From Leidyana gryllorum EB-2025a (Eukaryota > Protista > Apicomplexa): DNA of 64,000 bases. Location of the stretch: contig JBLWGC010000035.1 in the NCBI GenBank assembly GCA_048772705.1, positions 248,001 through 312,000 on the forward strand. Reading direction: 5' to 3'. Below the pieces are notes generated by a model. The model was not told the DNA's origin. It saw only the letters and a program-made list of their open reading frames with translations, and ran no database searches. Position numbers and translations under genes: made by a program. Positions 1 to 37,010 of this stretch are shown here, one piece after another. Every line of letters begins with the position of its first letter. Within the stretch, counting starts at the first letter, position 1.

Positions 1-2994
1 GGTCTTGCGGGTGCGGATGTAGTCGTGGAACTTCTTTACAGCCCACACCACTGCGAATGCTTCCTGTTCCGACGTGCTCCACCTGGTCTCCGCGTCAGTC
101 AACTTCTTACTAGCATATTCCAGGGTCACCAGCGTCCCCTCTTGGGCTTGCATCAGCACCGCCCCGACCCCTTTCTTACAGGCATCCGTGTTAATCACGA
201 ACAGCCCAGGGCCCTTAGGATAGGCCAGTAAGGCCGCTTCGGCGATTCCCTTCTTAACTAGCGCGAACGCTCGTTGCTGCTCGGGACCCCACTCGAAGGG
301 GTGACTCTGCTTGGTGAGAGACGTCAGTGGCTCCGCGATCGTGCTGTAATCCTGCACGAACTTTCTCAAGTAGCTACTCATCCCCAAGAACTCCCGTAGC
401 TCTCTCAAATTCGTGGGTGCAGGTGCGTTTACGATCCCCTGCACCTTCTTCGGACTCGGCCTGATGCCTTCCCGACTTACTCTAAACCCTAGCATGTTGA
501 CCTCTCGCCTGTACAGCTCCGTCTTCTTGAGCTTGAAGAAGAACCCTGCTTCCCTCGCCGCCGCCAGTACCTCTCGCAGCGTCGCGTCGTGTTCCTCCTT
601 CGTGTCACCCCAAATGGTGATATCGTCAATGTACCTCGTCGCGCAACGGACGGAACCGAAGGCTAGATCTAACGCGCGTTGACACTCGCTCGGAGAATTA
701 CGCACTCCGAACGGGAGCACCGTGTACTCGTAAGTGCCAGCGTGGGTGATCATCGCGGTGTACGGCATACTCCCCTCCTCTAGCCTTACGTTCCAGAAAC
801 CGTTGGCGCAATCTAGAGCCGAGTACCACTCGTGCCCGGCTGCCAATTGGCACAGGTCCCACACGTGAGGCAGGGGGTACGCGTCCGGTACCATCTGCGC
901 GTTGAGAGGGCGGTAATCTACTACAATCCGCCACTCCCCAGTCTTCTTCTTTACAAATAAGGGGCTTGCACCCCACGGGCTCTTACTCGGCCTGATTACA
1001 CCAGCCTTGAGCATACTCTGGAGTTGCTTATCCAACTCCTCCTTCAACTCCGCGGTCAGCGGTCTCAACCTTGCCCTATACGGCTTCCCGTAAACCTCGA
1101 AGCTGGCGGTGCTGACCTTAACTCGCCCCGGCACCGGGTCCAGCCAGGCATCTTTATACTCCCACCAGATGTCCCACAGCTCAGAGACCCTCTCCGGACT
1201 CAAGTGACTCGTGATCGCATGAAACGTAGCTCGAGCCTCGGCTTTCTTTTCTTCGTCGGTAGCCCCTATCTCGTAGCCTGTAACGACGTCTTTAGCCGCA
1301 TTGGCTCGCTTCTCTTCCTCCGTAAGCTCAACCATCAGCGCCTCGACCCTCCTAGGCAGTAACTGGCCCTCGAGAGGGTCCAGCAACAGCCCGCTGGTCT
1401 TCAACGCGTCCATACCTACTAGTAACTGGTCATGATGCGTCTCGACTACCCAAAACGATTGCTCAAAGCCAACCCCTCCAATCTCCAACTTTACAGGTTC
1501 GAGCTTCCGGCCCCTCGCGGTACCCAGCCCGGCGAAGTTTACCGTATCACCGGTAGCCCTTAACCCGAACTTCTTACGCAACGAAGGCCCGCAGACACTG
1601 AAAGCCGCTCCTGTGTCGACTATCGCCTCGAACTCTACTCCGTTGATCTTTACGGGCATCCGGAAAGCCTTTCCGAACCCGTTCGGCGAGCAGCGATACA
1701 CCTCTCTCTCGCCAAGGTAATCTTTGAGCAGGCGGCAGGTCTCCTCGAGGACTCCTTCATCGTCGGTCTCGCTCGACGAGTCCTCGGCCTCGCACACCTT
1801 GGCGTCCGCTTTCTCCTCTTCCGCTGCTTTCTTCTTGGCGGCCTCCTTGAGCTCTCGGTAATGCTTCGCTTTACGCTCTCTAACTTTCGCTGCTCGACTT
1901 CGCAAGATCTCCAACAGCTCTTCCGCGCTTACGATCTTCTCTTCGGCTGAATACGGCTCCTTAGACTGAAGCACGTGACCTGCCCGGGTCTCCATTACAC
2001 GAAGCTTGATCCTCTGCGACTTCGGATCGCGCTTTACTAGCGCCCTACACGTGGTCGCGGCGTGACCTTTCTTGTCGCAATGCTCGCACTTTTTCTCCTT
2101 GTACTCGCAGTCCTTCGAGTGGTGACCCTTCAACCCACACCTGAAGCAGGGAGGCTTCTCCACCTCCTTCTTGGGGGTATCGGCCGGCGCCTTGGGCGGC
2201 TCCGCCGTTTTCTCTTCCATCGACTCATCAGTCGCCGGAGGCTCTGCCGTAAACAGCGGGACACCCGTCCGCGCTCTCTTCTTAGCACACTCAGCTTCGG
2301 CGAACTCAGCCCCGTCCATTAAGGCCGTGAGCGAGTCGAGGTTGGGCATATAGCTTAATCTCTCGAGCACATCGAGGGGTAAACTTCTCTTGAAGAGCAT
2401 CCGCAACCTTCCCTCGGTGAGCAGGGAGTCGTGTTGGCGACGGTCTCTCACTCGGACGAATCTCCTGCAGACCGAACGCATCCACGCCACCGCATCCGGC
2501 ACTGTCCCCGCTCTCTTTCCCGCAGCGATCTCTAACTCGAGCTCCTCTACGTAGTCGGAGTGGCGGAAGTGTCTCTTCGCCACTCTCTCGACCATCTCCT
2601 CGTACTGGAGTCCCGCCGGTAGGCTACGGAGGGTTGCCGCTACATTCGGCGTTGCCACCAGAGCCCAGGCATCTCTGAAGAGTTCGGAGCAGAGTCCGAA
2701 TCTCTTGATTTGCGCCGCCGCTGCGTCGACCCAGTCTTCGAACGCTCTCTCGTTGGGCGGGTCGAATGGAGCGAGGTTGAGGAAGTTGAGGAACTTGGCT
2801 CTCCGATTGAGCTGTTCCACCACGTCGTCCTCATGTGGTTCTCGGGGGAACCTCTCGTCGTTAGCTAGGAACTCCAACAGCACAGCCTCGTGGTTCCCAG
2901 AACAGCCCCCAGCTGAGCCGTGTGAATGGCTCACGTTAACCTCCGAGGCTGCGGGGGTTCCTATAGGCTTACTCAACATAGGCGTGTCGCTCAT
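1..2994 (-). CDS. Gag-Pol polyprotein (3' partial; missing from the ORF track because no stop lies inside the window)
   Basis: Manual translation from ATG 2994: capsid-like helices; zinc knuckles CFRCGLKGHHSKDC and CEHCDKKGHAATTC (2047-2148); protease AIVDTGA (~1610); RT motifs SPWGASPLFVKKK, DYRPLN, LPFGVRNSP, YIDD (622-633); RNase H start FVINTDACKKGVGAVLMQ. ATG and YIDD are in the same frame. Confidence 0.93.
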   Translation of the reverse strand, partial: MSDTPMLSKPIGTPAASEVNVSHSHGSAGGCSGNHEAVLLEFLANDERFPREPHEDDVVEQLNRRAKFLNFLNLAPFDPPNERAFEDWVDAAAAQIKRFGLCSELFRDAWALVATPNVAATLRSLPAGLQYEEMVERVAKRHFRHSDYVEELELEIAAGKRAGTVPDAVAWMRSVCRRFVRVRDRRQHDSLLTEGRLRMLFKRSLPLDVLERLSYMPNLDSLTALMDGAEFAEAECAKKRARTGVPLFTAEPPATDESMEEKTAEPPKAPADTPKKEVEKPPCFRCGLKGHHSKDCEYKEKKCEHCDKKGHAATTCRALVKRDPKSQRIKLRVMETRAGHVLQSKEPYSAEEKIVSAEELLEILRSRAAKVRERKAKHYRELKEAAKKKAAEEEKADAKVCEAEDSSSETDDEGVLEETCRLLKDYLGEREVYRCSPNGFGKAFRMPVKINGVEFEAIVDTGAAFSVCGPSLRKKFGLRATGDTVNFAGLGTARGRKLEPVKLEIGGVGFEQSFWVVETHHDQLLVGMDALKTSGLLLDPLEGQLLPRRVEALMVELTEEEKRANAAKDVVTGYEIGATDEEKKAEARATFHAITSHLSPERVSELWDIWWEYKDAWLDPVPGRVKVSTASFEVYGKPYRARLRPLTAELKEELDKQLQSMLKAGVIRPSKSPWGASPLFVKKKTGEWRIVVDYRPLNAQMVPDAYPLPHVWDLCQLAAGHEWYSALDCANGFWNVRLEEGSMPYTAMITHAGTYEYTVLPFGVRNSPSECQRALDLAFGSVRCATRYIDDITIWGDTKEEHDATLREVLAAAREAGFFFKLKKTELYRREVNMLGFRVSREGIRPSPKKVQGIVNAPAPTNLRELREFLGMSSYLRKFVQDYSTIAEPLTSLTKQSHPFEWGPEQQRAFALVKKGIAEAALLAYPKGPGLFVINTDACKKGVGAVLMQAQEGTLVTLEYASKKLTDAETRWSTSEQEAFAVVWAVKKFHDYIRTRKT
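2894..2911 (-). promoter_or_regulatory. Primer binding site, probably tRNA-Pro
   Basis: Minus strand TGGGGGCTGTTCTGGGAA (18 nt, starts TGG) resembles the tRNA-Pro PBS TGGGGGCTCGTCCGGGAT. Confidence 0.7.
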
Positions 2995-6997: not shown

Positions 6998-7598
6998 TGT
7001 TGAGGGCCAAAAAATCCAATCCGACCGCAATCTAAAATTCTACTCGATCCGACCCGACCCTGTTGGCAATCTCACTCGGATGCCAGAGTCCTTCAGTCTT
7101 GATCTATCAGGATTAGCTAGTCGATCTGGATGTTGGGCCCCGTCCCCAGTTAAGCTGTATGTCTCCTGCCGGTCCATACGAGACATTGGAGACCGGCCTG
7201 GTAGACACAGACACGTGTGTGCTCTACGTTAATTGAATTAGACGATAGTCAAAAAGGGAACTAAAAATCCACTACTGATACCATTAGATGAGGAACATTC
7301 ACACAGGGCGAATTGACTACGCCTACAAGTCGTCATCCCACTATGGATGAGTTTCCAGATCAAGTCTTGTCGCAGCGCCGAACCACCTCACCGCTAATTT
7401 CCTGATCGAAGGTATCGACACTGGACGCGGCAACAGATCAATTGCCCTCCGGCGAACCCGCCTTCGAATACCGACAACTCTGTTCGTTCAGAATCGCTCG
7501 ATATCTCTGATTAAAATCCAGATTGATTTGAGGGTGAGAGCTCCGGCAATGACACGACTCCAAAGCCGAGCTCTCCTACTACCGCCTTCCGGCTGGGT

Positions 7599-8194
7599 GC
7601 TGTCCAGACACCAATTCCAGCAGAAATGTCGTCCAGGGCTCCTCCAGGAAGGCTATTCCGTGCAATCCCAATCTCACAGAACGTCCGGTGAGGAGTTGGA
7701 CTTCGTGGAGGACCAAATAAGTCCACAATATGTCTCTCGGATGTGTCACCAAATCCGTCACAATCTGAGAGATTTGGTGTTTTATGATTACTTCCTTAAA
7801 TCGCAATGCCGTCTCCATGTTGGAGGGCAGATGCTTCATGCGACAGCTTCGGACGCATTCCTCGGGTAACAGTGCGGAGTCCTGCGGGTCGATGATCGCC
7901 CAGTGACGGAAACGGGGTTCGAGATTTTCCGCCGATCTCAGGTAGCTTTGAAGTCGCCAGCGCTCTTTGGGCGTCAGCGTTTTCACAACAAAATATCGAG
8001 TTTCCGCCATTTCGGCTAAAGACAATCGTCTCCTCTTCGAAGCCGTCGAAGTTCTCTTACAGTGCCCAAAATGTCGTTTGTCATTGGTGTCGGAGTCTGA
8101 AGTGATGTCGCTATCCGTTGATCTGAACTCTTTCTGGGGGCCCTCGGAAGGTTCGGCGTCCAGCAGTCCCGCTCTAACCGCAGGGACCCATCCG
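7599..8194 (-). pseudogene. F-box-like gene, copy 3, internal fragment
   Basis: Matches ~5429-6044 with small in-frame deletions; lacks the 5' end, and a ~470 bp deletion removes the 3' end. Confidence 0.8.
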
Positions 8195-14653: not shown

Positions 14654-15721
14654 TCAGAGCTCATCTGCGGGCGAGTCTGCCCACTTGCGTCTCCAATATG
14701 CAGAATTGACTGAATGCTTGAGGATGAGTTGTTTGAGGGACAACGGTGTTAGATCTTCGGGTTTGTGCGACAAAGGAATGGGATTATCATAGCCGTGTTT
14801 GGGCGTAAAGAAATGGATCTGTGGAACGCGATCGACTTTTAGGGGCGGCCAATGTATGTCATTCTTGGTGGCGTCGACTATGTAGTAGGCGAGTTTGCCA
14901 GGGGCTGCAGTTTGGTCCGCCATATGTGTCAATGCTTTTTGGACACGACGGCAGTGGCCACACCATGGGGCATAGAAGAAGACGAAGAACTCGTCCGGAG
15001 TGGCGCCGGGGAGGCCTTTGTTGACGCCTGTTTGGTGCCGTACCATAGCATGGAATCTTTGAGAGTTGATAGGATGCAGGGAGGAGTCGCTATATAACTG
15101 ATCAACGGGTTGATTCCGCAAGTAGGGCGTCAGAGTACCATTAAAGTAAGGACCAATGAGGTGGAATATCATACTCTTCTGAAACTCTTCTCTCTTTTCC
15201 TGAATATCGGCTTCCGGATCATTCAGTATATCAGCGAGAGGGAGCACATAGCGATTGAAACCGCCGAAAACGTCGAACAGTACCGCGGCAGGATACAATG
15301 TAGTCTCAAAGTCTTCGCCAATGACTGACCCGAAGCCATCCAGGAACTCTGGCTTTCCGACAGAAATGAAACTGAAACTGTTGGGATATGACGCCCGACT
15401 CAGCAATTCCAAAGTGGGAGAAACGACCTCGCCATGTTTCTCCGACTCGTGGAAGACAAAGAGAAAGCGCCCCAGGCGACTCTGCTTGAGATATTCCGAG
15501 CGAGCACCTTCCCATTCGTGGAATTCCGACCGGCCTCGCAACCTAATCACTCCCGGACCGATCGCACCCCAAGGGTGACGTGCCCCCACCTTTGACTCAA
15601 ATGCCGATTTCTTCGGGCCCTCCGTGGACCCCCATAGGAAATGCCGCACCAACAGATAACATAGCCCCAGAACGCAGATAACACGAATAGCAATATTAGC
15701 CGCTGCCTTGGGGCCCTTCAT
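14654..15721 (-). CDS. Protein disulfide isomerase family protein
   Basis: N-terminal hydrophobic segment, FFVFFYAPWCGHC active site, C-terminal ADEL ER-retention-like signal; start taken as MKGPK. Confidence 0.88.
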   Translation of the reverse strand: MKGPKAAANIAIRVICVLGLCYLLVRHFLWGSTEGPKKSAFESKVGARHPWGAIGPGVIRLRGRSEFHEWEGARSEYLKQSRLGRFLFVFHESEKHGEVVSPTLELLSRASYPNSFSFISVGKPEFLDGFGSVIGEDFETTLYPAAVLFDVFGGFNRYVLPLADILNDPEADIQEKREEFQKSMIFHLIGPYFNGTLTPYLRNQPVDQLYSDSSLHPINSQRFHAMVRHQTGVNKGLPGATPDEFFVFFYAPWCGHCRRVQKALTHMADQTAAPGKLAYYIVDATKNDIHWPPLKVDRVPQIHFFTPKHGYDNPIPLSHKPEDLTPLSLKQLILKHSVNSAYWRRKWADSPADEL

Positions 15722-15805
15722 TCGCGACCAGTCACCGAGTAGAAATTTGCACGGTATTCTCCTCCCGAGATTCCGCCACGATGCCGATTTGCTCTTCAAA
15801 CCAGA

Positions 15806-19232: not shown

Positions 19233-20834
19233 ATGGGCTCAGCCATATCCTGCCATACGTCCTCCAAAGACAGCCCACAACACAACCGCGTCGACAACAA
19301 CCCCCCTCGCCCACGTACACTACAAACACTCTTAGACTCGATCAAAGACACACAAACTCACGAATGGCTCGCTGCCCTCCTATCTCCAGACTCCCTTACC
19401 ACCCCTCTCGGTGAGTTTAGCTCATTCGCCTTGGGAGCCTATCATCAGTGCGACTGTCCGATCATTGCAGGAAATTGGTTGGCTACGACTTCCACGGCCG
19501 CGCTGCTCGATAGACTCGCAGACATCACTTCCCCTTCCAACTTTCGAGCACTATACTCTCTCTACACCCAGGCAGGCGTATTTCGAGATGTTTACATCTC
19601 AGACCCCAACGAATGGCAGTATGTATTGCTCAACGTCAACGCCTATCCACTATATCAACATCAGAACCTTCCCCAAAGTGCCTGCCAAGATTGTCCAGCT
19701 GCTCCCCGTGCTCACTGACCCCGGCACCGGGCTGGTCGCCACTCTCAGCAAAAACGTCAGCCGAGTGGAAGGGGACGTGACCCTCACACCCCGCCCAACA
19801 CCCCCCCTCAAAACCAAGACTCTTAATAACTCCATGCTATTCATGGTATGAAATCCCATTCACCAACTTCGGCCCACCCACTGCCACATAGCTTTCGCTC
19901 GCCTCCCTGAACCTTCAGAGCGCTCTCATCGGTGCAGAACCGGTACTACTATTTTCAATTGACCTCTGCGGTAAAGCCTCAGGAATACTGTACATCCGTT
20001 GCCAACCCTCTCCTTCAGGTCATAGCTGGATCCGATTTGTTGATGCCATCGACTGCTACCCGGCTCCAGTCCTCCTCGCTCTCAAATCCAAAGCATTAGA
20101 GAGTCACCCAGCCAACATCTTCGGTGCATATATCCCGGGGTAAGGCGCAATATTGACAGCATCCGACGACCCTCTCTCCTCTCCAGAGGAATACAAGAAA
20201 CCGCCACTAAGTATGGAGGAGCTGCTGAGACCTTCCTGTGGGGTTTCCAGCCTGAACTCAACGTCTGCCAGTGAGCGAACATGTCTGAGACCACCAAATG
20301 ATCACTTGAACGCAGTACTTCGGGTCTGAGCTCCAAATATGTCATGCTCAACAAGCAGTCACAGTTTGCTCCGACGGGGTTGGGCTTCGGTGGCCAGCCG
20401 GGAACATTCAGACTCTACCTCTCAGCTGATCTACACAATTCGACCATTTGTATCAGTGATGCCACGTACAAAGCCGGAGCTATTGTTGACATGACTGACC
20501 AGGAATATGGTGACGACTCCTTTCAAAAGGTGTTACCCATCGAAGAAGTCGAAGTTTGGGGGCTTGGCACAGAGGCAGATCTACAAGAGCAACAATACGC
20601 AAAACAGCGGGATGAAGAAGTGAGTAAATGAGTTCTGCACAACCTTTGAGAGTATTTCATGGCAAATTTGGACAGATTCGCGAAGACAGAAGAAAAGTTG
20701 ATCGAGCCCGTATGGCTGACAATGCATTTGATCGCGAGTATCTGCTGGGACATGGTGGTAAAGGCGGTGAGCGCGAGGGAGAGGTGCAAGCAATCTTGGA
20801 AGAAAGACGAAGGGGCAAAGGCAATGCAGAGTGA
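19233..20834 (+). CDS. TLDc-domain protein (MEAK7/TLDC1-like), multi-exon
   Basis: MG start; GHSWIRF, NIFGAY, YGGAAETFLW, GLGFGGQPGTFRLYLSADL, IEEVEVWGLG. Confidence 0.85.
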
Positions 20835-20889: not shown

Positions 20890-21780
20890 CTAACCCAGGA
20901 TATCGAGACGTTTCTTCAGTACGGGCAGCGTACTGCCAGCCGGAGGTCCCAATCTATTGCCACTGCAGATGGGCGAAACCAATGTGGTTCGAATCTCCCG
21001 GCGGCGAGTCGGATATTCTTCTTCGGCTTGGCTCTTCCGTAAACACTTGTGTCGGCGTTGACGATCACAGTCTCCTGCCGTCGGAGCGTCCAAGTGCACT
21101 CTGTGCGATCTTGCTAGGCTAGGCGGAAGGGCCGGGGGCAGTCCTGGCACAGTCTTGGACACTGTGGAGCCTGTGGAGGCCGAGGAAGCTACCTCCGTTG
21201 GTCTCAGGAAGCTAGCCTGACGAGCAATATATTGTTTTTCGGCTTGCGTCGCCTTCTTGAAAAGCTGGGCCACACTTATGGTGCCATCTATGGCATCAGC
21301 CTGCAAGACGGTGGAGACCGAGGGAGGAAGAAGATGAATGTACGCCCTGCAAGTGATCTGGTGCATGAAGGGGTCTTCAAGCAACCATCTGTAGTTCACT
21401 GTTCCAGTCGGCTGGTCGCGGTTGGCTGCCATACTCAATGCATCGGTGAATTCCAGAATGTACTTGTTTGCTTCCTTCACTGATCGCATGGGAGGTCTGT
21501 TGAACACTTCAGCCACATATAGAGCCAGAAAACTCTGAGTTCCGAACCAATCTCTAAAGAAACTATCGCGTACGTCTCTGTAGGATTTGCCCTGGTAGCT
21601 GAATCGATTGGACATGATACGCGACAGAGGCAGATGCTTGATAAGCTGTGCAATTCGTTCTTCATCAGAATGGATGTCTGCATCACTCAGCGCACGTTCA
21701 AAGCGTAGTAACCATACATCTGTCTCGAATGGGGTCTGCACAGTGAGTGGATCCGTCAAAAGAGCGTGCTGCTTGGTCAT
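20890..21780 (-). CDS. Stand-alone retrotransposon Gag capsid-like protein
   Basis: Intact intronless 296 aa ORF whose first ~185 aa are colinear by eye with the Gag of the element at 1-2994; no zinc knuckle, protease, RT or LTR. Confidence 0.65.
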   Translation of the reverse strand: MTKQHALLTDPLTVQTPFETDVWLLRFERALSDADIHSDEERIAQLIKHLPLSRIMSNRFSYQGKSYRDVRDSFFRDWFGTQSFLALYVAEVFNRPPMRSVKEANKYILEFTDALSMAANRDQPTGTVNYRWLLEDPFMHQITCRAYIHLLPPSVSTVLQADAIDGTISVAQLFKKATQAEKQYIARQASFLRPTEVASSASTGSTVSKTVPGLPPALPPSLARSHRVHLDAPTAGDCDRQRRHKCLRKSQAEEEYPTRRREIRTTLVSPICSGNRLGPPAGSTLPVLKKRLDILG

Positions 21781-21879
21781 GAAGGCTGTCTGGGATCAAG
21801 CACACGTGTTCGATAGCATTAGTATAGGGAGCGCAGAGTGTGGGTGTGGGGAAAAATTTGGTGGCGCCCTCGCGGGATA

Positions 21880-24800
21880 ATGTTGGACACCACCTGCTCT
21901 TTCTACATAAGCAATGCTGCTTACGATGAGGATGTGGACAGTTTGGTAGCCCCGAGCGTGCAGGATATTCAGAAACAGCTGGAAAGCAGCAATGACCAAT
22001 CCAAGATGAAGGTATGAGTGGTTCACCGACACTATGATGCTGGTCAGGGTATGAAAGATCTGCTGTTGTGGAGCCGTAATGCTCCGTTGGACCAAGTGCA
22101 AGCATACCAGCGGTTGTTCATCACTGTCATTCGATTTGTCGCGCCCAGTCGTAACCATCAAGTGCGCAAGCTCGTTCAGTTGTATTGGGAAACAATCGAG
22201 CAAGTGGACGACAAGGGGGAACCCCGGCCCGAAATGATATTGGTCAGGTAGGGGATGCTCAGTAACCACGGCAAATCGCGTGTATCACAGCAACTTCATT
22301 CGAAATGATCTGTTGCACTCCAATGAATATGTGCGTGGAAATTCCCTACGAAGCTTGGCTAAGATGTGTACCGTGAGTCTGCTGAACACCGTTTCGGACT
22401 GCCTACCGGAGAATTTGGTGAGAAGATATCAGATCGCCGAGTGGCATCTCACTAATGTTTGCATTTAGACCCATTCTTACACCTACGTACGACGAAACGC
22501 AGCAATGTGTATTGCTGCCATAGTACAACGACTCGGGCCAGTTTTGCCCCAAACTGTTCCGGAGTTGGAGAAGATGGCTATATCAGAGGAGAACGTGGCA
22601 ACTCAACGTGCAGGCATTTTAGCACTGATCGAGTGTGACCCTGTTCGCGCAACCGAGTTATTCCTGCTGGATGACAGAAACTGCAGCCACTTGGGAGAGA
22701 TGTGCTTGTTGGCGATTGTGCATTTGGTGAAGGTGGTGTACAAGGCGATCTGCCAGACCTTCCCTCCGACACAAGTGTCTATAGCCCTGAACCAAATCAT
22801 CACAAGGGAGCTTCTGATCAGGTGAGATTTGAGAGAGGATGCGCATTCATTTTCACTCCAGTCGTTTGGTTGAGCTTTTGGACGAGAGTACATCCGATGC
22901 ATTGACTTTGGAAGCTGCGACTGCTTTGCTGTGGGTTGGCGGTTATAGTCCGAGTGTGGCGAAGGCTTCGTGCAAAGCGTTAGTGAAGGTTTTGTTGTCT
23001 CAGAAAGACATCAACATCCGGATGGCTGTAATTGACAAATTGATAGCTGTCAGTCGGAAGTGCGTCGGACTGTTGGATGAGTACGTTATTGACATTTTGA
23101 GAGTGTTGTCAAGTCCCTCGGCTGAGCTATGCCAGAAGGTACTTGTCTGTACACTGCCTGTCATCCGCAAGACCAACGTGGCGGCAGCCGTTGGAGTCAT
23201 CAAGGCAGAATTGGTCAAATCGATGGATTTGGCTGCGGAGACGGCGAAGAAAGGCGATACTCAGAAACAACTTGTGAGAGCCATGCGGTACCTGAGTGGC
23301 AAATTCCCCGAGATTGCTGACTCTGTGATCGACCTTCTCCTGGATAGCCTAAGTAAGATTCGCTCGGGATGAACACTAAAGTCGTGCATTCTTAACAGCG
23401 GACACTGACCGTGAAGCTGTGAATCGTGTAGCCCTCTTGGTGCGTGAGTTGGTGGTGACCAACGAGCAACTGCGTCCACGTATCATGGAGAGTTTGATCG
23501 AGGGACTCCCAGAAATGTACTCTGGACGGGCCTTACGACTCGCCATTTGGATCATTGGAGAGCTTTGCAATGATTCCAAGATGAGAGTGAGTAGCTGAAA
23601 CTCGTTGTTTCGCGAATGGCTCTGATTGCAGGCGGATCTCATCGATGCGTTGTACACGATGCTGGCTCCATATCCCTGGAAGAGTCGTCCAGCCGATGCT
23701 GTTCTTTCGGATGGAGAGGATGAGGAGGAAGAAGAGACCCCGGCCGCGCAGGTGGAGGTTACTGTCCGTACTGTCATCCTGCCAGATGGGGCTTATGGAA
23801 CCGAGAATGTGATAGAGTCGGCTCCAACGGGTGGCATACCGCCCACCACTTCGGGGTCCAGTGGCGCTGCCAACGGGAACAGCAATGGGCTGAGACATAT
23901 CATTTGCGACACTACAGAGACACTGTCGGCGTCGGTTGTGGGAGTGGCTCTGACCAAATTAAGCGCCCGTAAAATGAGTGGTGCACCCTATTCGGCCTCG
24001 GAGTACAACAAAGTTTTATTAATGTTGGGTTCAATGATCAAATTCTTCAAGGACGACCCCTACTTTGGGCCCTCAAGTGACGTCGCTCTGCGACTCACTC
24101 AGTGTCTCCGTATCGTTATGCAGAGTTGGGTCGCAGGTGGTACCGCCAAGGTTCCAGAGATGATTCCGATTGATCTTGTCAAGGTGATTGAGGGTGAGAG
24201 GGAGTCCACCATACAAGAAGGACTCAACCTGACTACCGACGGGACGCTTATTGACAACAATCTCGAGAACGCTCTCGGACCAGATGAGGAGATTGCTGAA
24301 CTCGTGAGTGAATCGATAGCTCTGCTCCGCCTTTTACGACTTGGATCCACTCTCAGATGCAATCTAATGTATACGATGTTCTGAGTTTCCGAACACTGAG
24401 TGGGTCGGATGAGGTCATTCCTTCAGAGGCCGCTGTATTCTCGCCTGGACTCAGTACTGAAGACGGCATTCCTTTGGACTACAGTTCCAGTATTGAGCTG
24501 GCTGTCAAGGGAACAAAGTGCGTGGGTGACGTGGCCAAACTATTGTTGAGCCTGTCCCGACCAAACAAGGCTGAGCGTCTGACGGGCAGCAGCGACCCCA
24601 TATATGTTGAGGCGGTGCTTCAGAACAACCATCTGGATGTCATCATGGAGCTTCTCTTGGTCAATCAGACTGATGAGACGCTTCAGAACGTTCAAATATA
24701 TTTGTGTGTGAACGGCGACATCAAGATCATCGAGCGGCCACCTACTGTCACTCTCGACGCTTGGGAAGAGACCACAGTATTCGCCAGTCTCCGTCTGGCG

Positions 24801-25545
24801 AGCACCGAGGTCGGTAAAGTGTTTGGCTACATAGGGTTCGAACGTGGTCGCCATGCGGCAAATAAGGAATATATTACTCTGAGTGTTCTCCCCATCGATC
24901 TCGTGGTGAGTTATGCCGGCAGTGCGGGGCAATGTAATCATCTCTGCCTTCAACAGAGTTGCATCCAACGGGCTTACATTGGTGCTGGAACATTCCGGGC
25001 TTTGTGGCCGGCTTTGGAGTGGGAGAACAAGTTTGTGGTGGAGTTGGATAATGAGGACATGATGGGCTTCCTCCTCCAACTCTTAAAGACGACGAAGATG
25101 ACCGTCGTCGGGTTGTTTGGCGATAGTTCCACTGCGCGACAATTAGCTCAGCTCAAAGGACATAAGTCTATGGATCTCCTCGAAGGTGAGATATCGGGAC
25201 GTTTAGATTCGGAAAGATCCATCTCATTAATGACTCAGACGCAGAGGCCGTAGCCACGGAGAGATACCTGAAGGCTGTGGCTGAGGACAGGAATTTGCAG
25301 CAAATGGCTCAGAGCAAAGTGTTTGCAGTAAATCTCTGTGCTCGCACTCGATTCGGTATGTCAGTTTTGGGGATTCCAGCATACGTCTGATAGGAGAAGA
25401 TGCACTAATGAACCTGTCACTGGAGACCTCTGATGAGGGGAAGGTATCCGGATGCGTTCGGATACGGGCGCGCAAGCAGGGGATTATTGTGAATTTGGGT
25501 AATCTGGTTGCTGCATCTCAGTGTACACAAACTGTGATGGCCTAG
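21880..25545 (+). CDS. COPB1: Coatomer subunit beta, multi-exon
   Basis: EMILV, RNDLLHSNEYVRG, YVRRNA, ILPDGAYGTE, LTGSSDPIYVEA, WPALEWENK, GEDALMNLSLE, VRIRARKQG. Confidence 0.95.
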
Positions 25546-27001: not shown

Positions 27002-27166
27002 CACCAAGACTTTGTAAAAACAGCCCCAATTTTTATCGCACAAACGCGATCAAATTGGCCATGCGATCGCACAGTGTGTGATCTCACGTCAACTGTCATT
27101 CGTGCACAGTCTGCACACATTACCAAAGTGGGAGGTGGGGATTGTACGTGCATATTTTTGTGAGTC

Positions 27167-29638
27167 ATGCGCTTCATTCGATCTCTGTCGGTGCTCTTAC
27201 TCTCGGGGGGCAGCCTGCCAATCTGCTCGTCGACCTCTCTCAGGTTTGACGCCCCTTTTTTGGTATCATGGGTCAATGAGCGAACGAGGGAGGCGGTGCT
27301 ACAGGTCCGAGTGACTAACACTGCCGCCGAGCCTGTGGACGTTGCTTTGAGTTTCAATCAGACTTTTTCCACTGATTCAAGTGCCGTTCCTTCGCCGGGA
27401 GCTTCCGCCTATGTGGAGAGCTCTCGCAGCGTGTCGGCCTTTAGTGCAACTCCTCAGCTCGACTCGGCGGCGGTGGACTCGGCCATTGCCTCCCTCTTTA
27501 CAACCTCGCGAACTTTCGGTGGACCCAAGACGCTTTTGATCCCTATTGCTGAGAATAAGGATGCGATTGCTCAATACGCCCCGCAAGTGATGGACTGTCT
27601 TCGGGAACACGGCGCGCAATGTCAATACACGGCTTGGAGAGCAAACTCAGAATGTCGTCCGGGCGTACGTATCATGCAGTATGTCGGTCTGATCGCTCTG
27701 GACTACGATTGGATTATCTCCAAGTGTTCCCCGGAAGATGTGGCAGCTGACGTGGCTTTCTTGGGGAAATACTTTACTCTCTTAGACGTCGAGCTCGACG
27801 AGCCAGAACCTGAAGATCCTCCCGAGGAGACCACCGAGCGACGCTCTGAGGTCACCGACATGATGGTTGCTCCTTTCGCTGACGCCCGAGCCACCACCCC
27901 GAATGATCCTGACTATAGCCTCCAGTGGCATTTGCAGTATCTGTGAGTCAAACTCATCTCTCTCACGACTCACTCGGAATCGCCCCTCCCTCTGCAGCAA
28001 TATTACTGAGACCTGGAAAGAGATCGGGGAATGGCCCAAGTACTTCAAGCCGTTCGTTGTAGTGGTGGATAGTGGCGTACACTGGGATCATCCCGATTTG
28101 CAAGGCAACTTGTGGGTTAATGAAGCAGAATTAAATGGGAGACCCGGAGTCGATGACGATGGCAATGGGCACGTCGATGATATTTATGGTTGGGTCGCTC
28201 AAGCAGACGGCTCACGCAAGCCAATCGATGCAACTGGACACGGAACACATGTATTGGGACTTATCAGTGCAGTTACGAACAACAACATCGGTGTCTCCAG
28301 TGTTGCCGGACCCCATGTGACAACTGCAATGTGCCGCAGAAGAAATTGGGCCGGCGACGGGTCCAGTTCACACGCGGCCGAATGCAAAAACTGGGCCATG
28401 GCGGTGGGAGCCCACTTTACCACCAACTCGTAAGTGATCCTTCACAAGGCTTTGTGAACATCAAGCCATGGGCCTTCAGGTACGGCTCTTTCTACGACGC
28501 ACCGTACTCAATCTCGAGCACAAAGAGGAGAGTCTACAACGCCATGATGGCACGCAAACAGGTATATCTGACTTCTGCCGGGAATAAGGGAAAGGACTTG
28601 GGGCCGAGGAGAGTGCGGGGATACGCTTACGATTCTTGCTACAATTACCCCTTCATGGTTTCTGTTGCAATGACCACCAAGGACGGTGTTCTCCACGAGA
28701 AGTCCAACTATGGCGAGAACTGTGTGACTTTGGGTGCTCCAGGCCGAAGATTGTGGGCAACAGCCAATCCCGGCCACACATCGGGTGATCTATATGTCTC
28801 CAAGACCGGTACTTCCATGGCCACTCCTGTCGTGGCTGGCATCCTGGCGCTTTGGCTCAATGTCAACCCCTACTTGGATGCCTTTGAGCACAAACGATTG
28901 TTACGCGAATCCACTGTCCCACTCAAGGCTCTCGCCAGACCAGTTACCCTCTTCGGAGGAATACCCAGTCCGCTGGAAGGAGTCAGACTTTTGCGCCCTC
29001 AGACGCTCAGACCCCAAGACGGCAGCCGCTGGGATGACTATCGTTTCAACCTGAGACGTCTGCAGCCGGGCCAATCCACCATATACTATCTGAAAGGACA
29101 ACTTGGAGCGAAGGATGGACCCATCTTGGGAGAAATGATTGCTTACAATGTCGACTTTGCTAAGAATTACGCTGTCAAAGATTTCGCCAAGGTGGCTATT
29201 TCGACTCGCACCACCAAGGAGTCTTTTGATCAGCTCACCGTGGATCATTTCAACCCGACTTGGAATGGTCTGACCACAACGACCACAACGCCTGCGACCA
29301 CTCCCACAACAACCACAACGCCTGCGACCACTCCCACAACAACCACAACGCCTGCGACCACTCCCACAACGACCACAACGCCTGCGACCATTCCCACAAC
29401 GACCACAACGCCTGCGACCATTCCCACAACAACCACAACGCCTGCGACCATTCCCACAACAACCACAACGCCTGCGACCATTCCCACAACAACCACAACG
29501 CCTGCGACCATTCCCACAACAACAGTAGCGACCACGACAACGCCTACACCTACATCTCTCACTACAAAAACGCCTTCCGGAGCCTGCCGCTGTCGAGCGA
29601 GGCCCCAGGAGCGCTCAGTATTCTCTGTCGGTCTGTGA
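27167..29638 (+). CDS. Subtilisin-like (S8) protease, paralog 1 (introns 27943-27997, 28430-28479)
   Basis: Signal peptide; VVVVDSGV, GVDDDGNGHVDDIYGW, HGTH, SAGN, GTSMATP; Thr/Pro-rich tail. Confidence 0.93.
29281..29520 (+). repeat. 30 bp coding tandem repeat x8 (TTTTTPAT[T/I]P mucin-like stalk)
   Basis: Unit (a/g)accacaacgcctgcgacca(c/t)tcccacaac visible eight times. Confidence 0.95.
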
Positions 29639-29802
29639 GTTTAGGGTGCGACAGGAGACACAAGTTTATTTAGTGTGCACACAAATCGAGTATTGAGGTA
29701 GTGGCTAACGTATTTTTGCCGCATTCAAAGACACCCAAATTAGTTGATCTGTGAGGTGATCAGTCCGTGCCCACCGGAGTCGTGTCTCCTTGTAATATTT
29801 CG

Positions 29803-31942
29803 ATGAGGTCCTTTCGGTTTCGGTCGTTATTCGTGGTGCTATCGTGTGCACTCATTCCTAGATGTTCAGCCAGAACACTGCAATTTGACGCACCGTTTCT
29901 GATTGCTTGGGTCAATGAGCAGACCAAGGAGGCGGTACTGCAGGTGCGGGTGACCAACCCAACCACCGAGATACTAGACATCGCCCTCAGCTTCAATGCC
30001 ACTTTTCCATCCGACGCGACGGCAGTGCCGTCACCAGGAGACTCTTCATATGAAGAGACATCTAGAACCGCAGTTCGCACCAGTGACAAACTATTGGACT
30101 CTGGAACAGTGGATGAGGTTATTGCGACCCTGTTCCGGAACGCTCGCAGCGCCACCGCACTGAAAACACTTGTAATTCCAGTTGAGGAAAACGTGGAAGC
30201 GATAGCGAAATCTGCGGAAACAGTTCTTAAGTGTCTGAAAGAACACGGCTCCGATTGCAGATACCATGGCTGGCGCAAGAACTCAAAGTGTCGGCCAGGT
30301 GTCCGTATCATGCGCAACATAGGTCTCATTGCCCTTGATTACGATACGGTGATCTCTGATTGCACCCATGAAGACGTAGCAGGAGATATAGCCCTATTGC
30401 AAGAGTATTTTACATTGTTGGATGTCGAATTGGATGAGGAGGAATTCGACGATGAGCCGGTCAGTCCCGTGCGGAAGCTCGAGACGGATCCGGTTGCGCC
30501 TTTTGCGGGGAAGGCCGGTACGACCCCTAATGATCCGTTCTTCCGTGCCCAGTGGCACTTGAATTATCTGTGAGTATACACCCAATATGCAATCGAGTTG
30601 ACACGACTTCTTTTTTCCCTCACTTGCAGGAATATCACCGAGACTTTTGCAGAGATCGGCCGATGGCCGGGCTACTTCAAGCCCCTCGTGGTGGTTATCG
30701 ACAGTGGGGTGGATTATGACCATCCGGACTTGCGAGAGAACCTCTATCTCAACGAAATCGAGTTCAATGGGAAACCGGGTGTCGACGACGATGGCAACGG
30801 GCATATCGACGACATCTATGGTTGGGTCGCCAAGTCAGACGGTTCTCAGAAGCCGATCGACGCTAACGGCCATGGTACCCATGTTTTGGGTATTGTTGGC
30901 GCAACGACCGGCAACAGCGTTGGTGTCGCGAGTGTGGCAGGCCCGCATGTGACCACTGCTATGTGCCGTAGGAGAGACTGGACTGGCAGCGGGACCAGCT
31001 CCAACGCCCAAGAGTGCAAGGAATGGGCCATGGCCATTAATGCCCATTTCACCACGAATTCGTAAGTTTGAGAGAATTGGTGATCGGTTTGACGAGACTC
31101 ACAGGTATGGCTCGTCATACGACGAGCCGAGAAAGATCAGCAGTGCGAAGAAACGAGTGTATGACGAGATGATGAAGCGCAAACAGGTGTATCTCACCTC
31201 GGCAGGCAATAACGGTCGTGATCTCGGGCCAGAGAAGATCGAGGGATACTACTACGACCCGTGTCATAACTATCCTTTCATGGTTGGGGTGGCGTACATG
31301 AACGAGGAGGAAGAGTTGGCAAATAAGAGCAATTATGGCGAGAACTGTGTCACGCTGGCAGCGCCAGGCTCTGAGGTATTATCGACCGCAGATCCGGACT
31401 CTACCCTGGGTGAGCAATATGTGTTCCAGAGTGGAACCTCAATGGCTACGCCCGTGGTGGCTGGTATCCTGGCTTTGTGGCTCAACGTTAATCCCTATCT
31501 GGACGCGTACGAGCACAAGAGACTGCTGCGCGAGTCTATTGTACCGCTGCCTGCTGCCGCCCGCCCCAAAACCCTATTTGGAGGTGTGCCCAGCCCGTTG
31601 GCAGGGGTCAGACTACTTCGGCCCACCACGCTGAAGCCTGAGGACGGAAGTCGTTGGGATGACTTGCGCTTCAATCTTAGACGACTGTTGCCGGGCCAAT
31701 CTACGACTTACTATCTGAACGGAAAAATAGAGGATGTCGATGCTAATCTTGGCGAGATCATTGCATACAATGTTGACTTTTGGAGCAACTACCGTATCAA
31801 AGACTTCTCCACAGTCCCAATTCAAGTCCGCGTAACCAACAATACGTTGAGAAATCTCAGCATCGATGAGTTTAATCCCACTGTTGTTGATCTGAGAGTG
31901 GGCTCCCAGATCGCGGCCAAGAAGTCTCTCAGATCCCAATGA
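29803..31942 (+). CDS. Subtilisin paralog 2 (introns 30570-30629, 31062-31104); no hydrophobic C-tail seen
   Basis: VVVIDSGV, HGTH, SAGN, GTSMATP. Confidence 0.92.
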
Positions 31943-32130
31943 CAGCCCGCAATCTTAGTGACCACGCAGATGTCCCACTTACACCATCAATGATTTTGGA
32001 GAAGTGCCGCAGAGTACTGTGCTCAAGTTTCGACCTTCAATCCAAGCAATGAGACTTTCGTAAGAGTCCCCAACCTCTTTCTGTGTGTCTAAGTTTGTGT
32101 CATCCGTGCTCCCAGGCCCTAACACTTTGT

Positions 32131-32145
32131 TGAGGGGGCTGCATG
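32131..32145 (+). promoter_or_regulatory. G-run + TGCATG element upstream of subtilisin 3
   Basis: TGAGGGGGCTGCATG; shared with paralogs 4-7 at similar distance from the ATG. Confidence 0.6.
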
Positions 32146-32162
32146 TGTGTTGCTGCACGACG

Positions 32163-34440
32163 ATGTGGTGGACCCAACTGTTGTCAATTGCTTTGCTTTC
32201 GGCAAGGAGGTCATCGGCTCTCGAGTTTGACTCGAGAGCACTCATCACTTGGGTCAACCCACTGACTCGAAATGCCGTGCTCCAAGTTCGGGTCACCAAC
32301 AGAGACGCAGAACCGATCGACGTAGCACTCAGCTTCAATCAGACATTCCCGTCAGACGCTACCGCCATTCCTTCCCCAGGATCGTCTGTTCTCGCTGCGA
32401 GTGCTATGCAGTTCAACATCAGAACTGATCTGGACAAACATCGCCCTTCAGCCGTCGATGCACTCTTCTTGAAAAGTCGCAGCACAGCACCAAAAACACT
32501 GATTATCCCCATCGCAGAAAACAAGGAGGAGATTGCCAGATATGCTGCCAGAATTGTCGAGTGTCTCAAGGAACACGGACCCGCCTGTGCCTACACAGCC
32601 TGGAGAGCTGAATCTGAATGCCGCCCCAATGTCCGTATAATGAGACACGTCGGACTGATCGCCCTGGATTATGGACATATCTTGGCAAAGTGCACTCCGG
32701 AAGACGTCGGAGCTGATGTAGCTTTCCTGTCCAAATACTTCACAGTCCTCGATGTAGAACCCGATGAGGATGAGCCTGATGACCCCATTGAAGAGATCAG
32801 TCAGTATCGCGAGGATGTCAGTCCCATCCACGCTTTCACTCGGTCAGACATGACTCCCAACGACCCCGACTATGGACTTCAGTGGTATTTGCCGTATTTG
32901 TAAGTCTCACCTCTCGCCACCAGACAGCGTGTCTCCACCGCAGGAACATCACCGAAGCTTGGAAGCTCGTTGGTGAGTGGCCCAAGACCTTCAAACCCTT
33001 CGTCGTCGTCATCGACAGTGGCGTTCACTATGATCATCCCGATCTCGCTGGCAACATATATCGGAACGAGATAGAGTACAGGGGTCTTCCCGGGGTCGAC
33101 GATGATGGGAACGGACATGTTGACGATATCTACGGTTGGGTCGCTCAAGGGGACGGCTCTTTGAAGCCCATTGATAGCACTGGGCATGGCACCCACTGTC
33201 TCGGTCTGATAGGTGCTGTTAACAATAATAACATTGGTGTATCGAGTGTGGCTGGCTCGCACGTCACCGTGGCGATGTGTCGACGCCGAAGTTGGGCAGG
33301 CGAGTCCCCGAGTTCCAACTCTCAGGAGTGCAAGAATTGGGCTATGGCTGCCGGAGCGCACTTTACCTCTAACTCGTGAGTTCGATCCACATTTGAATTA
33401 TGTCTTTCATTGCTGATGCGTAGTTACGGATCCACCTACAATTCTCCCTACGCAATTTCGAGTGCCAAGAAGAGGGTTTACAATGCGATGATGGAAGCTA
33501 AGCAAGTGTATGTGACTTCGGCGGGGAACAAAAAGACAGATTTGGGACCTCCCAAGGTTGAGGGTTATGCCTATGATGGGTGTTACAACTACCCATTCAT
33601 GGTCAATGTAGCCATGAGCACCCAGAAGGGCAAACTCGTGTCGGGTTCCAATTATGGCGAGAACTGTGTCACTTTGGGAGCGCCTGGGTACCAAATGTGG
33701 TCCACTGGCGATCCGGACAACGCGAAGGGAAAGCTGTACGTCTACAAGACCGGGACATCTATGGCAACTCCGGTGGTCGCGGGAATCCTCGCTCTGTGGC
33801 TCAATGTTAACCCCTATCTGGATGCGTATGAGCATAAACGACTTTTACGCGAGTCTATTGTACCCACTGATGGTCTCGCCCGCCCCACTACTTTGTTCGG
33901 CGGTGTCCCCAGTCCTGTGAAGGGCATTCAAATGCTGAGACCCGAGAATCTCAAACCTCAGGACGGAAGCCGATGGGACGACTACCGCTTCAACCTGCGG
34001 AGGCTGCAACCGGGGCAATCAACCATATATTATCTGCGCGGTACTGTCAGTGATCCCAATACTGCAGTCTTGGGGGACATGGTCGCCTACAGCGTTGACC
34101 AGGCGAATAACTACAAAGTCAAAAAGTCAGTTAAGGCTATGGTCACTGTTCATCACAGTACCGAGAATCTCGATGATCTCATCGTTGATCACTTCAACCC
34201 CGATTGGGATGGTGTTGTCACCAGCACAACTACACCCTGGCCAGATGTTGTCGATACGCCGTCGGGGGGCGTGGATGGCACCATCACGGAACCGGCTGAA
34301 TCTGGTGAGTGACAGAGGCGTCGTGACACCCCTATGTAACTCCTATTTCAGGTATTGACGGCAAAGAGGTCCTTTCATCTTCCACAAAAGTCTCGGTGGT
34401 CATTATGGCCGCATGGCTCTTCAAGGAGTTGATCTTCTGA
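32163..34440 (+). CDS. Subtilisin paralog 3 (introns 32900-32943, 33376-33423, probable 34305-34351)
   Basis: Triad motifs intact; the third intron adds a hydrophobic tail VSVVIMAAWLFKELIF. Confidence 0.9.
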
Positions 34441-34758
34441 GCATCAACAGATTAAACCTCGCCACACCTGTGATGATGATTTACTCCTACTGCACCAATG
34501 ATGCCAAATGTTCCTGCGAAACACCTCGATGTGTCGGTAATGTATCAATGTCATCTTCTCTGTGTTAGTTGATCGCTGTATGACGAGAGTCCGCATCATC
34601 ACGGAGCCCGCCTCTCTACACACGCGTCACTCGCATATTGGGCCAAATTCTGCAAGCTCAACAAGAGTTTTCGTGTCTCTGCGCGACGACCGAAGAGCCT
34701 CTGTGAGATTGGGAAGCCTATGAATTAGTCTGGGACGAGCCAATCATTTCCAGCCGTC

Positions 34759-34775
34759 TGAGGGGGGCTGCATGC
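34759..34775 (+). promoter_or_regulatory. G-run + TGCATG element upstream of subtilisin 4
   Basis: TGAGGGGGGCTGCATGC. Confidence 0.6.
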
Positions 34776-34785
34776 CAGACTCATC

Positions 34786-36946: not shown

Positions 36947-36991
36947 ACGAAGGCTACCGGTGTCGAAAGGAGTCGGCAGACCTCCCGACGT

Positions 36992-37010
36992 TGTGGGCTC
37001 CGCATGCATG
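36992..37010 (+). promoter_or_regulatory. G-run + GCATGCATG element upstream of subtilisin 5
   Basis: TGTGGGCTCCGCATGCATG. Confidence 0.55.

What the first reader, a model, noticed from the sequence alone, without database searches (positions are those of the whole stretch)
20890..21780. Candidate domesticated Gag capsid gene (Arc/PEG10-like) in a protist
Seen: intact 296 aa ORF that aligns by eye to the Gag of the Gypsy element in this window (AFEDW/ETDVW; GLQYEEM/GKSYRDV; HF..SDYV...LEI/WF..QSFL...AEV; TVPDAVAWM/SVKEANKYI; SLPLDV...L/LLPPSV...L; SLTALMDGAEFAE/SVAQLFKKATQAE). It has no zinc knuckle or pol and fills the gap between TLDc (55 bp away) and COPB1 (99 bp, head-to-head), leaving no room for LTRs. 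The shared upstream region holds GTGGGG (21846) and TGGCGCC (21862). Known: Ty3/Gypsy gag domestication produced Arc, PEG10 and PNMA in animals. Inference: a host-co-opted capsid acting as an RNA carrier or a dominant-negative restriction factor against the resident retroelement.
Basis: partly seen in the sequence, partly recalled or inferred. Interest (0 to 1): 0.8.

Follow-up and report, generated by a model that had tools for sequence, protein, structure and literature searches.

The report
Probable gag-derived gene beside COPB1
A solitary 296-codon gene wedged between two housekeeping genes of a probable protist looks like a very diverged copy of a retrotransposon capsid (Gag) protein; if related genomes confirm this, it would be the first such host-captured capsid gene reported outside animals, plants and fungi.

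Summary
The ORF (20890-21780, minus strand, 296 aa) is real. It is the only coding-like frame at its locus. It lies 99 bp head-to-head with COPB1 and 55-258 bp from a TLDc gene, with no LTR, pol or zinc knuckle. No relative was found in Pfam, the word search or the 1.84-billion-protein search.

Local comparisons with the window's Gypsy Gag are at chance (BLASTP E>7; hhalign probability 3-6%). It beats 24,519 shuffles, 394 real-protein decoys and 19 Gags of other Gypsy clusters, and shows no signal against protease or RT profiles.

Two single-sequence AlphaFold models are poor (pLDDT 52-59). Their best PDB matches are nonetheless retroelement capsids (Copia, Arc, MLV, PEG10, PNMA2), none significant on its own.

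Verdict: probably a real gene (about 0.85), probably gag-derived (about 0.7-0.75) and plausibly co-opted (about 0.5). Synteny, selection, genomic copy number, expression and function could not be tested. The two promoter motifs occur at chance frequency.

The parts
20890..21780 (-). Intact single-exon ORF, 296 aa plus TAG stop; candidate gag-derived gene
   Evidence: Only 5 in-frame codons separate the ATG from the upstream stop (stop-to-stop 20893-21795). The codon log-likelihood is positive only in this frame of six (0.116-0.128, within the 0.045-0.31 range of the window's genes).
21376..21735 (-). aa 16-135: helical N half (possible capsid N-lobe); low model confidence before aa 85
Evidence: AF2 helices H19-33, H39-49, H67-94 and H101-119. 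Glocal score to the resident Gag family is reached by 3 of 1000 shuffles and 4 of 546 decoys.
21196..21375 (-). aa 136-195: helical C half (possible capsid C-lobe); best-modelled part
Evidence: pLDDT 63-88. The best single-domain Foldseek hits are MLV CA-CTD (TM 0.51 normalised to the target, 97 columns), Ty1 CA-CTD (0.50) and PEG10 CA-like CTD (0.39). P152, A177 and E181 are invariant across the ORF and six Gags.
20893..21195 (-). aa 196-296: predicted disordered, basic (pI 10.6), Pro/Ser/Arg-rich tail without a zinc knuckle
   Evidence: pLDDT below 50. Composition. No similarity to the Gag profile (z 0-0.7). Coding signal is weaker but still best in this frame (0.063-0.071).
21781..21879 (.). 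99-bp divergent intergenic spacer shared with COPB1; holds GTGGGG (21846) and TGGCGCC (21862)
   Evidence: Both motifs occur at chance frequency in the window (35 and 9 times).
21880..25253 (+). Neighbour: COPB1 (coatomer beta), multi-exon; exon 1 is 21880-22011
   Evidence: Pfam Adaptin_N, Coatamer_beta_C and Coatomer_b_Cpla on separate exons. PDB coatomer beta. ATG and first donor.
19233..20834 (+). Neighbour: TLDc-domain gene, convergent with the ORF (TLD domain 20344-20628; possible 56-nt intron 20620-20675 and stop at 20832-20834)
   Evidence: Pfam TLD E 1.4e-5. The splice is inferred from the sequence only. The start at 19233 is an assumption: the 19233-19715 ORF has no Pfam hit and its coding signal is weak (0.033).
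1..2994 (-). Comparison partner: resident Ty3/Gypsy gag-pol ORF, open for 998 codons and cut by the window edge; its Gag family gives the only profile the ORF resembles
   Evidence: Gag-region relatives P0004, P0002, P0006, P0003 and P0007 at 1e-23 to 1e-48.

Best explanation
The ORF is a real, single-copy-looking, intron-less protein-coding gene. Its first ~195 residues are an all-helical, two-part domain descended from the capsid (CA) region of a Ty3/Gypsy Gag of the same lineage as the element still present in this window. It has diverged to about 14% identity and has lost the zinc knuckles, protease, pol and LTRs. Because a sequence this diverged would not stay open for 296 codons without selection, it is most likely a host-co-opted gag.

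Inferred mechanism, not shown: the CA-like domain still self-associates or binds retroelement Gag lattices, and the basic disordered tail supplies non-specific nucleic-acid binding. The protein would then interfere with assembly of resident Gypsy particles, as Fv1 and Ty1 p22 do, or less likely form its own RNA-carrying particles, as Arc and PEG10 do.

Shown: ORF integrity, coding-like codon usage, the position between host genes without TE hallmarks, weak collinear similarity specific to the Gag profile, and capsid-dominated fold hits. Inferred: homology, co-option and any function.
For: 1. Coding. A 296-aa ORF whose frame is the only positive one of six. The known shadow ORFs of Nop56 and a subtilase score about 0.

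2. Sequence. The glocal score of aa 16-195 against the resident Gag family PSSM is -43.6. Shuffles give -83.3+-7.4 (0 of 24,519), 394 real-protein decoys give -86.6+-8.8 (0 reach it), and the reversed ORF gives -68.4. The result is unchanged when the resident element is left out of the profile. The ORF scores better than all 19 bona fide Gags of other Gypsy clusters. There is no signal against protease or RT profiles of the same proteins (z 0-1), and a weaker one against Gag cluster C (z 2.2-2.7). Both halves contribute and the tail does not. hhalign -glob gives 14.0 against shuffles 2.3+-2.2 (0 of 200) and decoys at most 8.9.

3. Fold. For the aa 1-200 model the top six of 350,542 PDB chains are Copia CA, Arc CTD, MLV CA (three entries) and Arc CA. 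PEG10 CA-like CTD is #12, PNMA2 capsid #13, and HIV, BLV and SIV CA follow. For the full-length model the top three are MLV CA, with Arc, HIV, Copia and Ty1 CA lower. In BFVD the two highest-probability hits are a caulimovirid coat protein and a lentiviral Gag.

4. Context. No LTR-like repeats, no pol remnants and no second copy in the window.

5. Sequence negatives weigh little. The resident Gag family profile itself hits no solved capsid and no Pfam gag family. True Gags of different clusters often give hhalign probabilities below 5% against each other.
Against: No local method gives significant similarity. Pfam gives nothing at E<=10. All Foldseek E-values are >=0.3, whole-domain TM-scores are 0.26-0.37, and the best single-domain value is 0.51. 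Both models come from a single sequence, have low confidence and are unreliable before aa 85.

The N-half register differs between glocal DP and hhalign or MAFFT.

No homologue exists in 1.84 billion representative proteins, so conservation, the core of any domestication claim, is unshown. Only 99 bp are available for a divergent promoter and two 5' UTRs. Copy number in the rest of the genome is unknown.
Confidence: 0.5

Rival explanations
1. A lineage-specific orphan gene encoding a helical protein with no evolutionary link to Gag. The collinear similarity and the capsid fold hits would be coincidences of helical periodicity and small helical bundles.
For: No significant local similarity and no Pfam family. 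No homologues at all. Foldseek E>=0.3 on low-confidence models. BFVD hits are mostly noise. The N-half register is unstable.
Against: The glocal score beats 24,519 shuffles, 394 decoys and the reversed sequence, and is specific to the Gag profile, not to PR or RT profiles. A blind fold search returned the predicted class as its top six hits.
Confidence: 0.2
2. A gag-only remnant or retro-copy of an unsampled Gypsy family of this genome that is not co-opted. It would be young enough to be still open by chance, or part of a non-autonomous element.
For: The genome carries an intact-looking Gypsy. The rest of the genome could not be searched, so a closer source family cannot be excluded. There is no evidence of conservation.
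Against: Flanks of 55-258 bp and 99 bp to host genes hold no LTR, PBS-like repeat or pol trace. Identity to the only detectable Gag family is about 14%. After neutral drift to that level an open 296-codon frame is very unlikely: my estimate from stop-codon frequency at 52% GC is an expected 0.01 such ORFs per window. Codon usage is host-like, although the Gypsy's is as well.
Confidence: 0.15
3. Not a gene: a chance or antisense open frame in the TLDc-COPB1 intergenic and UTR region.
For: Long shadow ORFs exist in this window: 441 aa antisense to Nop56 and 277-328 aa antisense to a subtilase. One shadow ORF reaches the same codon score, 0.128. The protein was not found in the protein collection. 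The space for a promoter is tiny.
Against: No frame on the opposite strand looks coding (all five other frames score -0.10 to -0.48), so it is not a shadow of another gene. The expected number of chance ORFs of this length per window is about 0.01 (my estimate). AF2 places confident helices at aa 85-200. There is a Gag-specific similarity signal.
Confidence: 0.1

Closest known systems
Co-opted Ty3/Gypsy gag genes of animals (Arc, dArc, PEG10/RTL, PNMA, SCAN, Drosophila Gagr) and the Crtg genes of plants and fungi (Wang & Han 2021, PMC8321522)
   Same: A solitary gag-like ORF without pol or LTRs at a host locus, with a two-lobed helical CA-like domain. Arc CTD, Arc CA, PEG10 CA-like CTD and PNMA2 capsid are among the best fold matches. 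Loss of the zinc knuckle is also seen in Arc (established knowledge).
   Different: No sequence relation to any of them, so any co-option would be an independent event. The host is probably a protist, where that survey of 2,011 eukaryotes found none. The defining evidence for those genes (orthologues, synteny, purifying selection, expression) is missing here.
Gag-derived restriction factors: Fv1 (ERV-L gag, mouse), enJS56A1 (sheep), Ty1 p22 (yeast)
   Same: A gag-only protein in a genome that still holds an apparently intact element of the lineage it most resembles. A CA-like domain is what those factors use to bind or poison capsid lattices (established knowledge).
   Different: About 14% identity to the resident Gag makes co-assembly doubtful. 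Ty1 p22 is encoded inside the element, whereas this ORF is a separate locus. No functional data exist.
Gag of the resident Gypsy family (window 1-2994; relatives P0002, P0003, P0004, P0006, P0007, P0008, P0010)
   Same: End-to-end collinear similarity over about 180 residues with few indels. Shared positions include LP..V...L and SV..LF..A...E in the C half.
   Different: No knuckles, PR, RT or IN. BLASTP E>7 and hhalign probability 3-6%. The ORF carries insertions of about 11 and 10 residues and lacks stretches of about 6 and 10 family columns in its N half.

Membership tests
LTR-retroelement Gag / capsid (Pfam Retrotrans_gag and related; CA fold) | Significant sequence match to a curated gag family or a solved capsid | tested here: not met
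   Pfam gives 0 families at E<=10. PDB phmmer gives only a spurious XPA hit at E 0.4. The bona fide resident Gag also fails this test, so it has low power in this lineage.
LTR-retroelement Gag / capsid (Pfam Retrotrans_gag and related; CA fold) | Similarity to a bona fide Gag family above chance | tested here: inconclusive
   Local methods are negative (hhalign probability 3-6%). The glocal profile alignment is positive and specific: 0 of 24,519 shuffles and 0 of 394 decoys reach it, and PR and RT profiles give no signal. The P value needs discounting for selection of the ORF and for multiple tests.
LTR-retroelement Gag / capsid (Pfam Retrotrans_gag and related; CA fold) | Two-lobed all-alpha CA fold (N-lobe plus C-lobe) | tested here: inconclusive
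   The models show 10-11 helices, of which 9-10 lie within aa 18-191, at mean pLDDT 52-59. The top PDB hits are capsids, but E>=0.3, TM is 0.26-0.37 for the whole domain and 0.51 for the CTD alone.
LTR-retroelement Gag / capsid (Pfam Retrotrans_gag and related; CA fold) | CCHC zinc knuckle (nucleocapsid) | tested here: not met
   None is present. The only C..C pair (aa 238-246) lacks knuckle spacing. Several co-opted gags also lack it, so this does not exclude gag descent.
Co-opted (domesticated) gag gene | No LTR, pol or other TE hallmarks; fixed position between host genes | tested here: met
   This holds within the window only.
Co-opted (domesticated) gag gene | Single or low copy in the genome, not a dispersed family | not testable with these tools
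   Only the 64-kb window is available, and it holds no second copy.
Co-opted (domesticated) gag gene | Orthologues in the syntenic position in related species, under purifying selection | not testable with these tools
   No relatives of the ORF were found. No relative of the COPB1 exon was found in metagenome contigs. The window's proteins were not found by exact look-up in the collection.
Co-opted (domesticated) gag gene | Expression as mRNA and protein | not testable with these tools
   No transcript data are available. The only indirect support is coding-like codon usage.
Arc / PEG10 / PNMA families (orthology) | Sequence membership in those animal families | tested here: not met
   No Pfam, PDB or database hit. 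There is resemblance only at the level of weak fold matches.
Capsid-forming or restriction activity | Self-assembly into particles, RNA binding, or inhibition of retrotransposition | not testable with these tools
   This needs bench work.

The most novel reading that the evidence does not exclude
This would be the first host-co-opted Ty3/Gypsy capsid gene in a protist (probably an alveolate-like lineage). It would have been captured from the same Gag lineage as an element still intact in the genome. It would keep a working CA-like assembly domain plus a basic RNA-binding tail, and act either as a capsid-targeting restriction factor or as a particle-forming RNA carrier.
Probability: 0.3. Interest if true: 0.75.

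Novelty: new member of a known kind. Interest (0 to 1): 0.55.

Why it matters
Gag co-option has produced important animal genes such as Arc, PEG10, PNMA and Fv1. A survey of 2,011 eukaryotes found only 14 deep events, all in animals, plants and fungi, and its authors noted that protists may be under-sampled (PMC8321522). A confirmed case in a protist would show that capsid capture is a general eukaryotic route to new genes. It would also offer a simple, intron-less, unicellular system with the presumed source element still next door, in which to ask what a captured capsid does.

There is a methodological point as well. Neither this ORF nor the bona fide resident Gag is recognised by Pfam or by sequence search against solved capsids. 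Surveys based on such searches would therefore miss this class in divergent lineages.

Tried and rejected
1. **Local sequence comparison of the ORF with the resident Gag.** BLASTP, Smith-Waterman and PSSM-SW are at or barely above chance.

2. **hhalign of the ORF against Gag profiles.** Against four Gag cluster profiles the probability is at most 3%. This is not usable as proof. True Gags of different clusters often score no better.

3. **Overlap alignment with free ends.** It picks trivial end overlaps and is the wrong test. Cyclic shifts keep collinearity and are a poor null.

4. **Searches for relatives of the ORF.** The word search found none, the 1.84-billion-protein phmmer search found none, the exact look-up was absent, and the metagenome DNA scan found none.

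5. **Synteny through neighbours.** The COPB1 exon scan of metagenome contigs found none. The word searches were exhausted. COPB1 and TLDc were searched exon by exon, by reference only.

6. **Word search with the Gag region of the resident element.** None found. The family was reached only through the Pol region.

7. **Source organism.** Rfam found nothing in the window.

8. **BFVD fold search.** Mostly noise, because the full-length model carries a disordered tail.

9. **The aa 238-246 Cys/His stretch as a decayed knuckle.** The spacing does not fit, so I rejected it.

10. **GTGGGG and TGGCGCC as promoter elements.** Chance frequency, so I rejected them.

11. **A 60,000-shuffle parallel run.** It timed out and was replaced by 24,519 shuffles.

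The window was not taken for human.

Full report
**1. What is there**

The window holds an ATG-to-TAG open frame of 296 codons at 20890-21780 on the minus strand. Only five in-frame codons separate the ATG from the upstream stop.

On its 5' side the ATG of a coatomer-beta gene lies 99 bp away on the other strand, at 21880. Exon 1 runs to 22011 and is followed by GTATGAGT. Separate exons match Adaptin_N, Coatamer_beta_C and Coatomer_b_Cpla, and PDB coatomer beta.

On its 3' side a convergent TLDc gene ends either at 20631 or at 20834.

COPB1 and TLDc were examined exon by exon, by reference. I built no joined spliced model. The window is not human-like. A Nop56 piece is about equally similar to human, Chaetomium and yeast (305, 293 and 290 bits). 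This fits a eukaryote outside animals and fungi, so 'protist' is plausible but unproven.

**2. Is it a gene?**

I trained a codon log-likelihood on Pfam-confirmed ORFs of the window.
- The ORF scores +0.13 per codon: +0.16 for aa 1-200 and +0.06 for the tail.
- Pfam-confirmed genes score 0.09-0.31.
- All five other frames at the locus are negative.

Known shadow ORFs, such as the 441-aa frame antisense to Nop56, score about 0. One shadow reaches 0.128, so the test is supportive and not decisive.

From stop-codon frequency at 52% GC, I estimate an expected 0.01 chance ORFs of this length per window. I put 'real coding gene' at about 0.85.

**3. No transposon hallmarks**

- No direct or inverted repeats beyond short chance matches flank the ORF.
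- tblastn with five Gypsy polyproteins finds no pol trace outside 1-3000.
- There is no second copy in the window.
- No CCHC knuckle is present.

**4. Relatives**

Nothing was found:
- Pfam, even at E<=10
- PDB sequences
- the word search
- phmmer against 1.84 billion representative proteins
- JGI metagenome contigs

The window's own proteins were not found by exact look-up in the collection. It is therefore unknown whether close relatives of this organism were searchable at all.

**5. The Gypsy element and its Gag family**

The window's left end (1-2994, minus strand) is an open gag-pol frame with two knuckles, protease, RT and RNase H. Its Gag matches no Pfam gag family.

A search with the Pol region found 85 relatives. 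Five of them (P0004, P0002, P0006, P0003, P0007) share the Gag region at 1e-23 to 1e-48. P0008 and P0010 join the same cluster. P0007 carries an accession cited in a paper on agamococcidian apicomplexans.

A profile of this Gag family finds no solved capsid by sequence. Bona fide Gags of different Gypsy clusters often give each other hhalign probabilities below 5%. Negative sequence results therefore say little about gag descent in this lineage.

**6.

Local methods fail:
- BLASTP E>7
- Smith-Waterman 35 against shuffles 34.7+-5.2
- PSSM-SW at or barely above chance
- hhalign probability 3-6%, on a different N-terminal block

I therefore forced residues 16-195 to align end to end within the family profile (gap open 11, extend 1).

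| Comparison | Score | Times reaching the ORF's score |
|---|---|---|
| ORF aa 16-195 | -43.6 | n/a |
| Shuffles | -83.3+-7.4, maximum -44.0 | 0 of 24,519 |
| Real-protein decoys | -86.6+-8.8 | 0 of 394 |
| Reversed ORF | -68.4 | n/a |
| 19 true Gags of other Gypsy clusters | all lower | 0 of 19 |

- Leaving the resident element out of the profile gives the same result.
- The signal is specific. Protease and RT profiles of the same proteins give z of 0-1, Gag cluster C gives z of 2.2-2.7, and clusters A and D give none.
- Both halves contribute: the N half at about 0.003-0.007 and the C half at about 0.02. The tail contributes nothing.
- hhalign in global mode agrees: 14.0 against shuffles 2.3+-2.2, with decoys at most 8.9.

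There are caveats:
- The empirical P is about 4e-5 against shuffles.
- MAFFT and hhalign place the N half in another register. Only the C half is stable across methods, with P152, A177 and E181 invariant.
- Identity to the resident Gag is 26 of 181.

**7. Fold**

With no homologues, AlphaFold ran on the single sequence. Mean pLDDT was 51.8 for the full length and 59.2 for aa 1-200. Residues 85-200 are reasonably confident, and the models have 10-11 helices.

No Foldseek hit is significant (E>=0.3), but the ranking is striking.
- **aa 1-200 model:** the top six of 350,542 PDB chains are Copia capsid, Arc CTD, immature MLV CA, MLV CA-CTD, mature MLV CA and Arc CA. PEG10 CA-like CTD is #12 and PNMA2 capsid is #13, with HIV, BLV and SIV CA below.
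- **Full-length model:** the top three hits are MLV capsids, with Arc, HIV, Copia and Ty1 CA following.
- **TM-scores:** the domain-level score, normalised to the target, reaches 0.51 (MLV CTD). Whole-domain scores are only 0.26-0.37, as expected if the two lobes are oriented differently or the model is poor.
- **BFVD:** the two highest-probability hits are a caulimovirid coat protein and a lentiviral Gag fragment, within an otherwise noisy list.

**8. Synthesis**

Two independent and individually weak lines point the same way: a Gag-profile-specific collinear similarity, and capsid-dominated fold matches. I put gag descent at about 0.7-0.75.

If that is right, about 14% identity to the nearest Gag family implies long divergence. 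An intact, coding-like 296-codon frame after that much change implies selection, which means co-option. This step is an inference. Copy number, synteny, dN/dS and expression could not be tested here. I put overall confidence in 'co-opted gag-derived gene' at about 0.5.

Function is open. The neutral helical domain (pI 7.0) followed by a basic disordered tail (pI 10.6) fits a lattice-binding or self-assembling module with non-specific nucleic-acid affinity. A restriction role against the resident lineage is my preferred guess, and a particle-forming carrier is the alternative.

**9. Novelty**

In the held literature, the systematic survey of gag co-option lists 14 deep events in animals, plants and fungi and none in protists (PMC8321522). 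Further searches found no protist case. If confirmed, this is a new member of a known kind and an independent event, not a relative of Arc, PEG10 or PNMA.

Noticed in passing
window 3093-8194: There are large direct repeats immediately upstream (minus-strand sense) of the Gypsy gag start. 3093-4958 matches 5726-7599 (95.7% over 1886 bp), 5429-6044 matches 7600-8194 (94.5%), and 3123-3411 matches 7918-8194. They carry long minus-strand ORFs (424, 676 and 253 aa) with no Pfam match. The 424-aa ORF ends only about 95 bp before the gag ATG, which leaves no room for a normal 5' LTR unless the repeat itself is the LTR or part of the element. It is unclear whether these are LTR-like repeats, tandem gene duplicates or another mobile element.
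   Followed up: partly
window 27164-44080 (+): A tandem array of at least six subtilase (Peptidase_S8) coding units, 70-75% identical at the DNA level with a period of about 2.3-2.6 kb.
   Followed up: partly
window 56869-58194 (+) and 57007-57915 (-): A 441-aa plus-strand ORF is a shadow of the real Nop56 gene on the minus strand (Pfam Nop E 4e-77; codon score -0.03 against +0.29 to +0.31). Long antisense ORFs therefore occur in this genome and ORF length alone is weak evidence of a gene.
   Followed up: yes
window 1-2994 (-); loci L001, L002: The resident Gypsy gag-pol is open for 998 codons up to the window edge. Its closest relatives are only 61% identical (Logan run ERR10900103) and 44% identical (ENA assembly ERZ25039484, a 30-kb contig packed with Gypsy copies). 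The nearest named relative carries an accession cited in a paper on agamococcidian apicomplexans. Its Gag matches no Pfam gag family and no solved capsid by sequence.
   Followed up: partly
window 20620-20675 (+): A candidate 56-nt phase-0 intron (GTGAGT...CAG) at the end of the TLD domain would extend the TLDc protein by about 52 residues, to a stop at 20832-20834. The 3' ends of the TLDc gene and the ORF would then lie within 55 bp of each other, so their 3' UTRs would probably overlap.
   Followed up: partly
window 48702-52802 (+), 52682-54007 (+), 44156-47340 (+): ORFs of 1366 aa and 441 aa have no Pfam match. The 655-aa and 396-aa ORFs at 44156-47340 together look like one CBF/Mak21 (NOC1-type) gene. 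A cyclin lies at 61867-63285 (-). A thioredoxin-domain ORF lies at 14654-15799 (-) and a PI-PLC Y-domain ORF at 54682-55593 (-).
   Followed up: no
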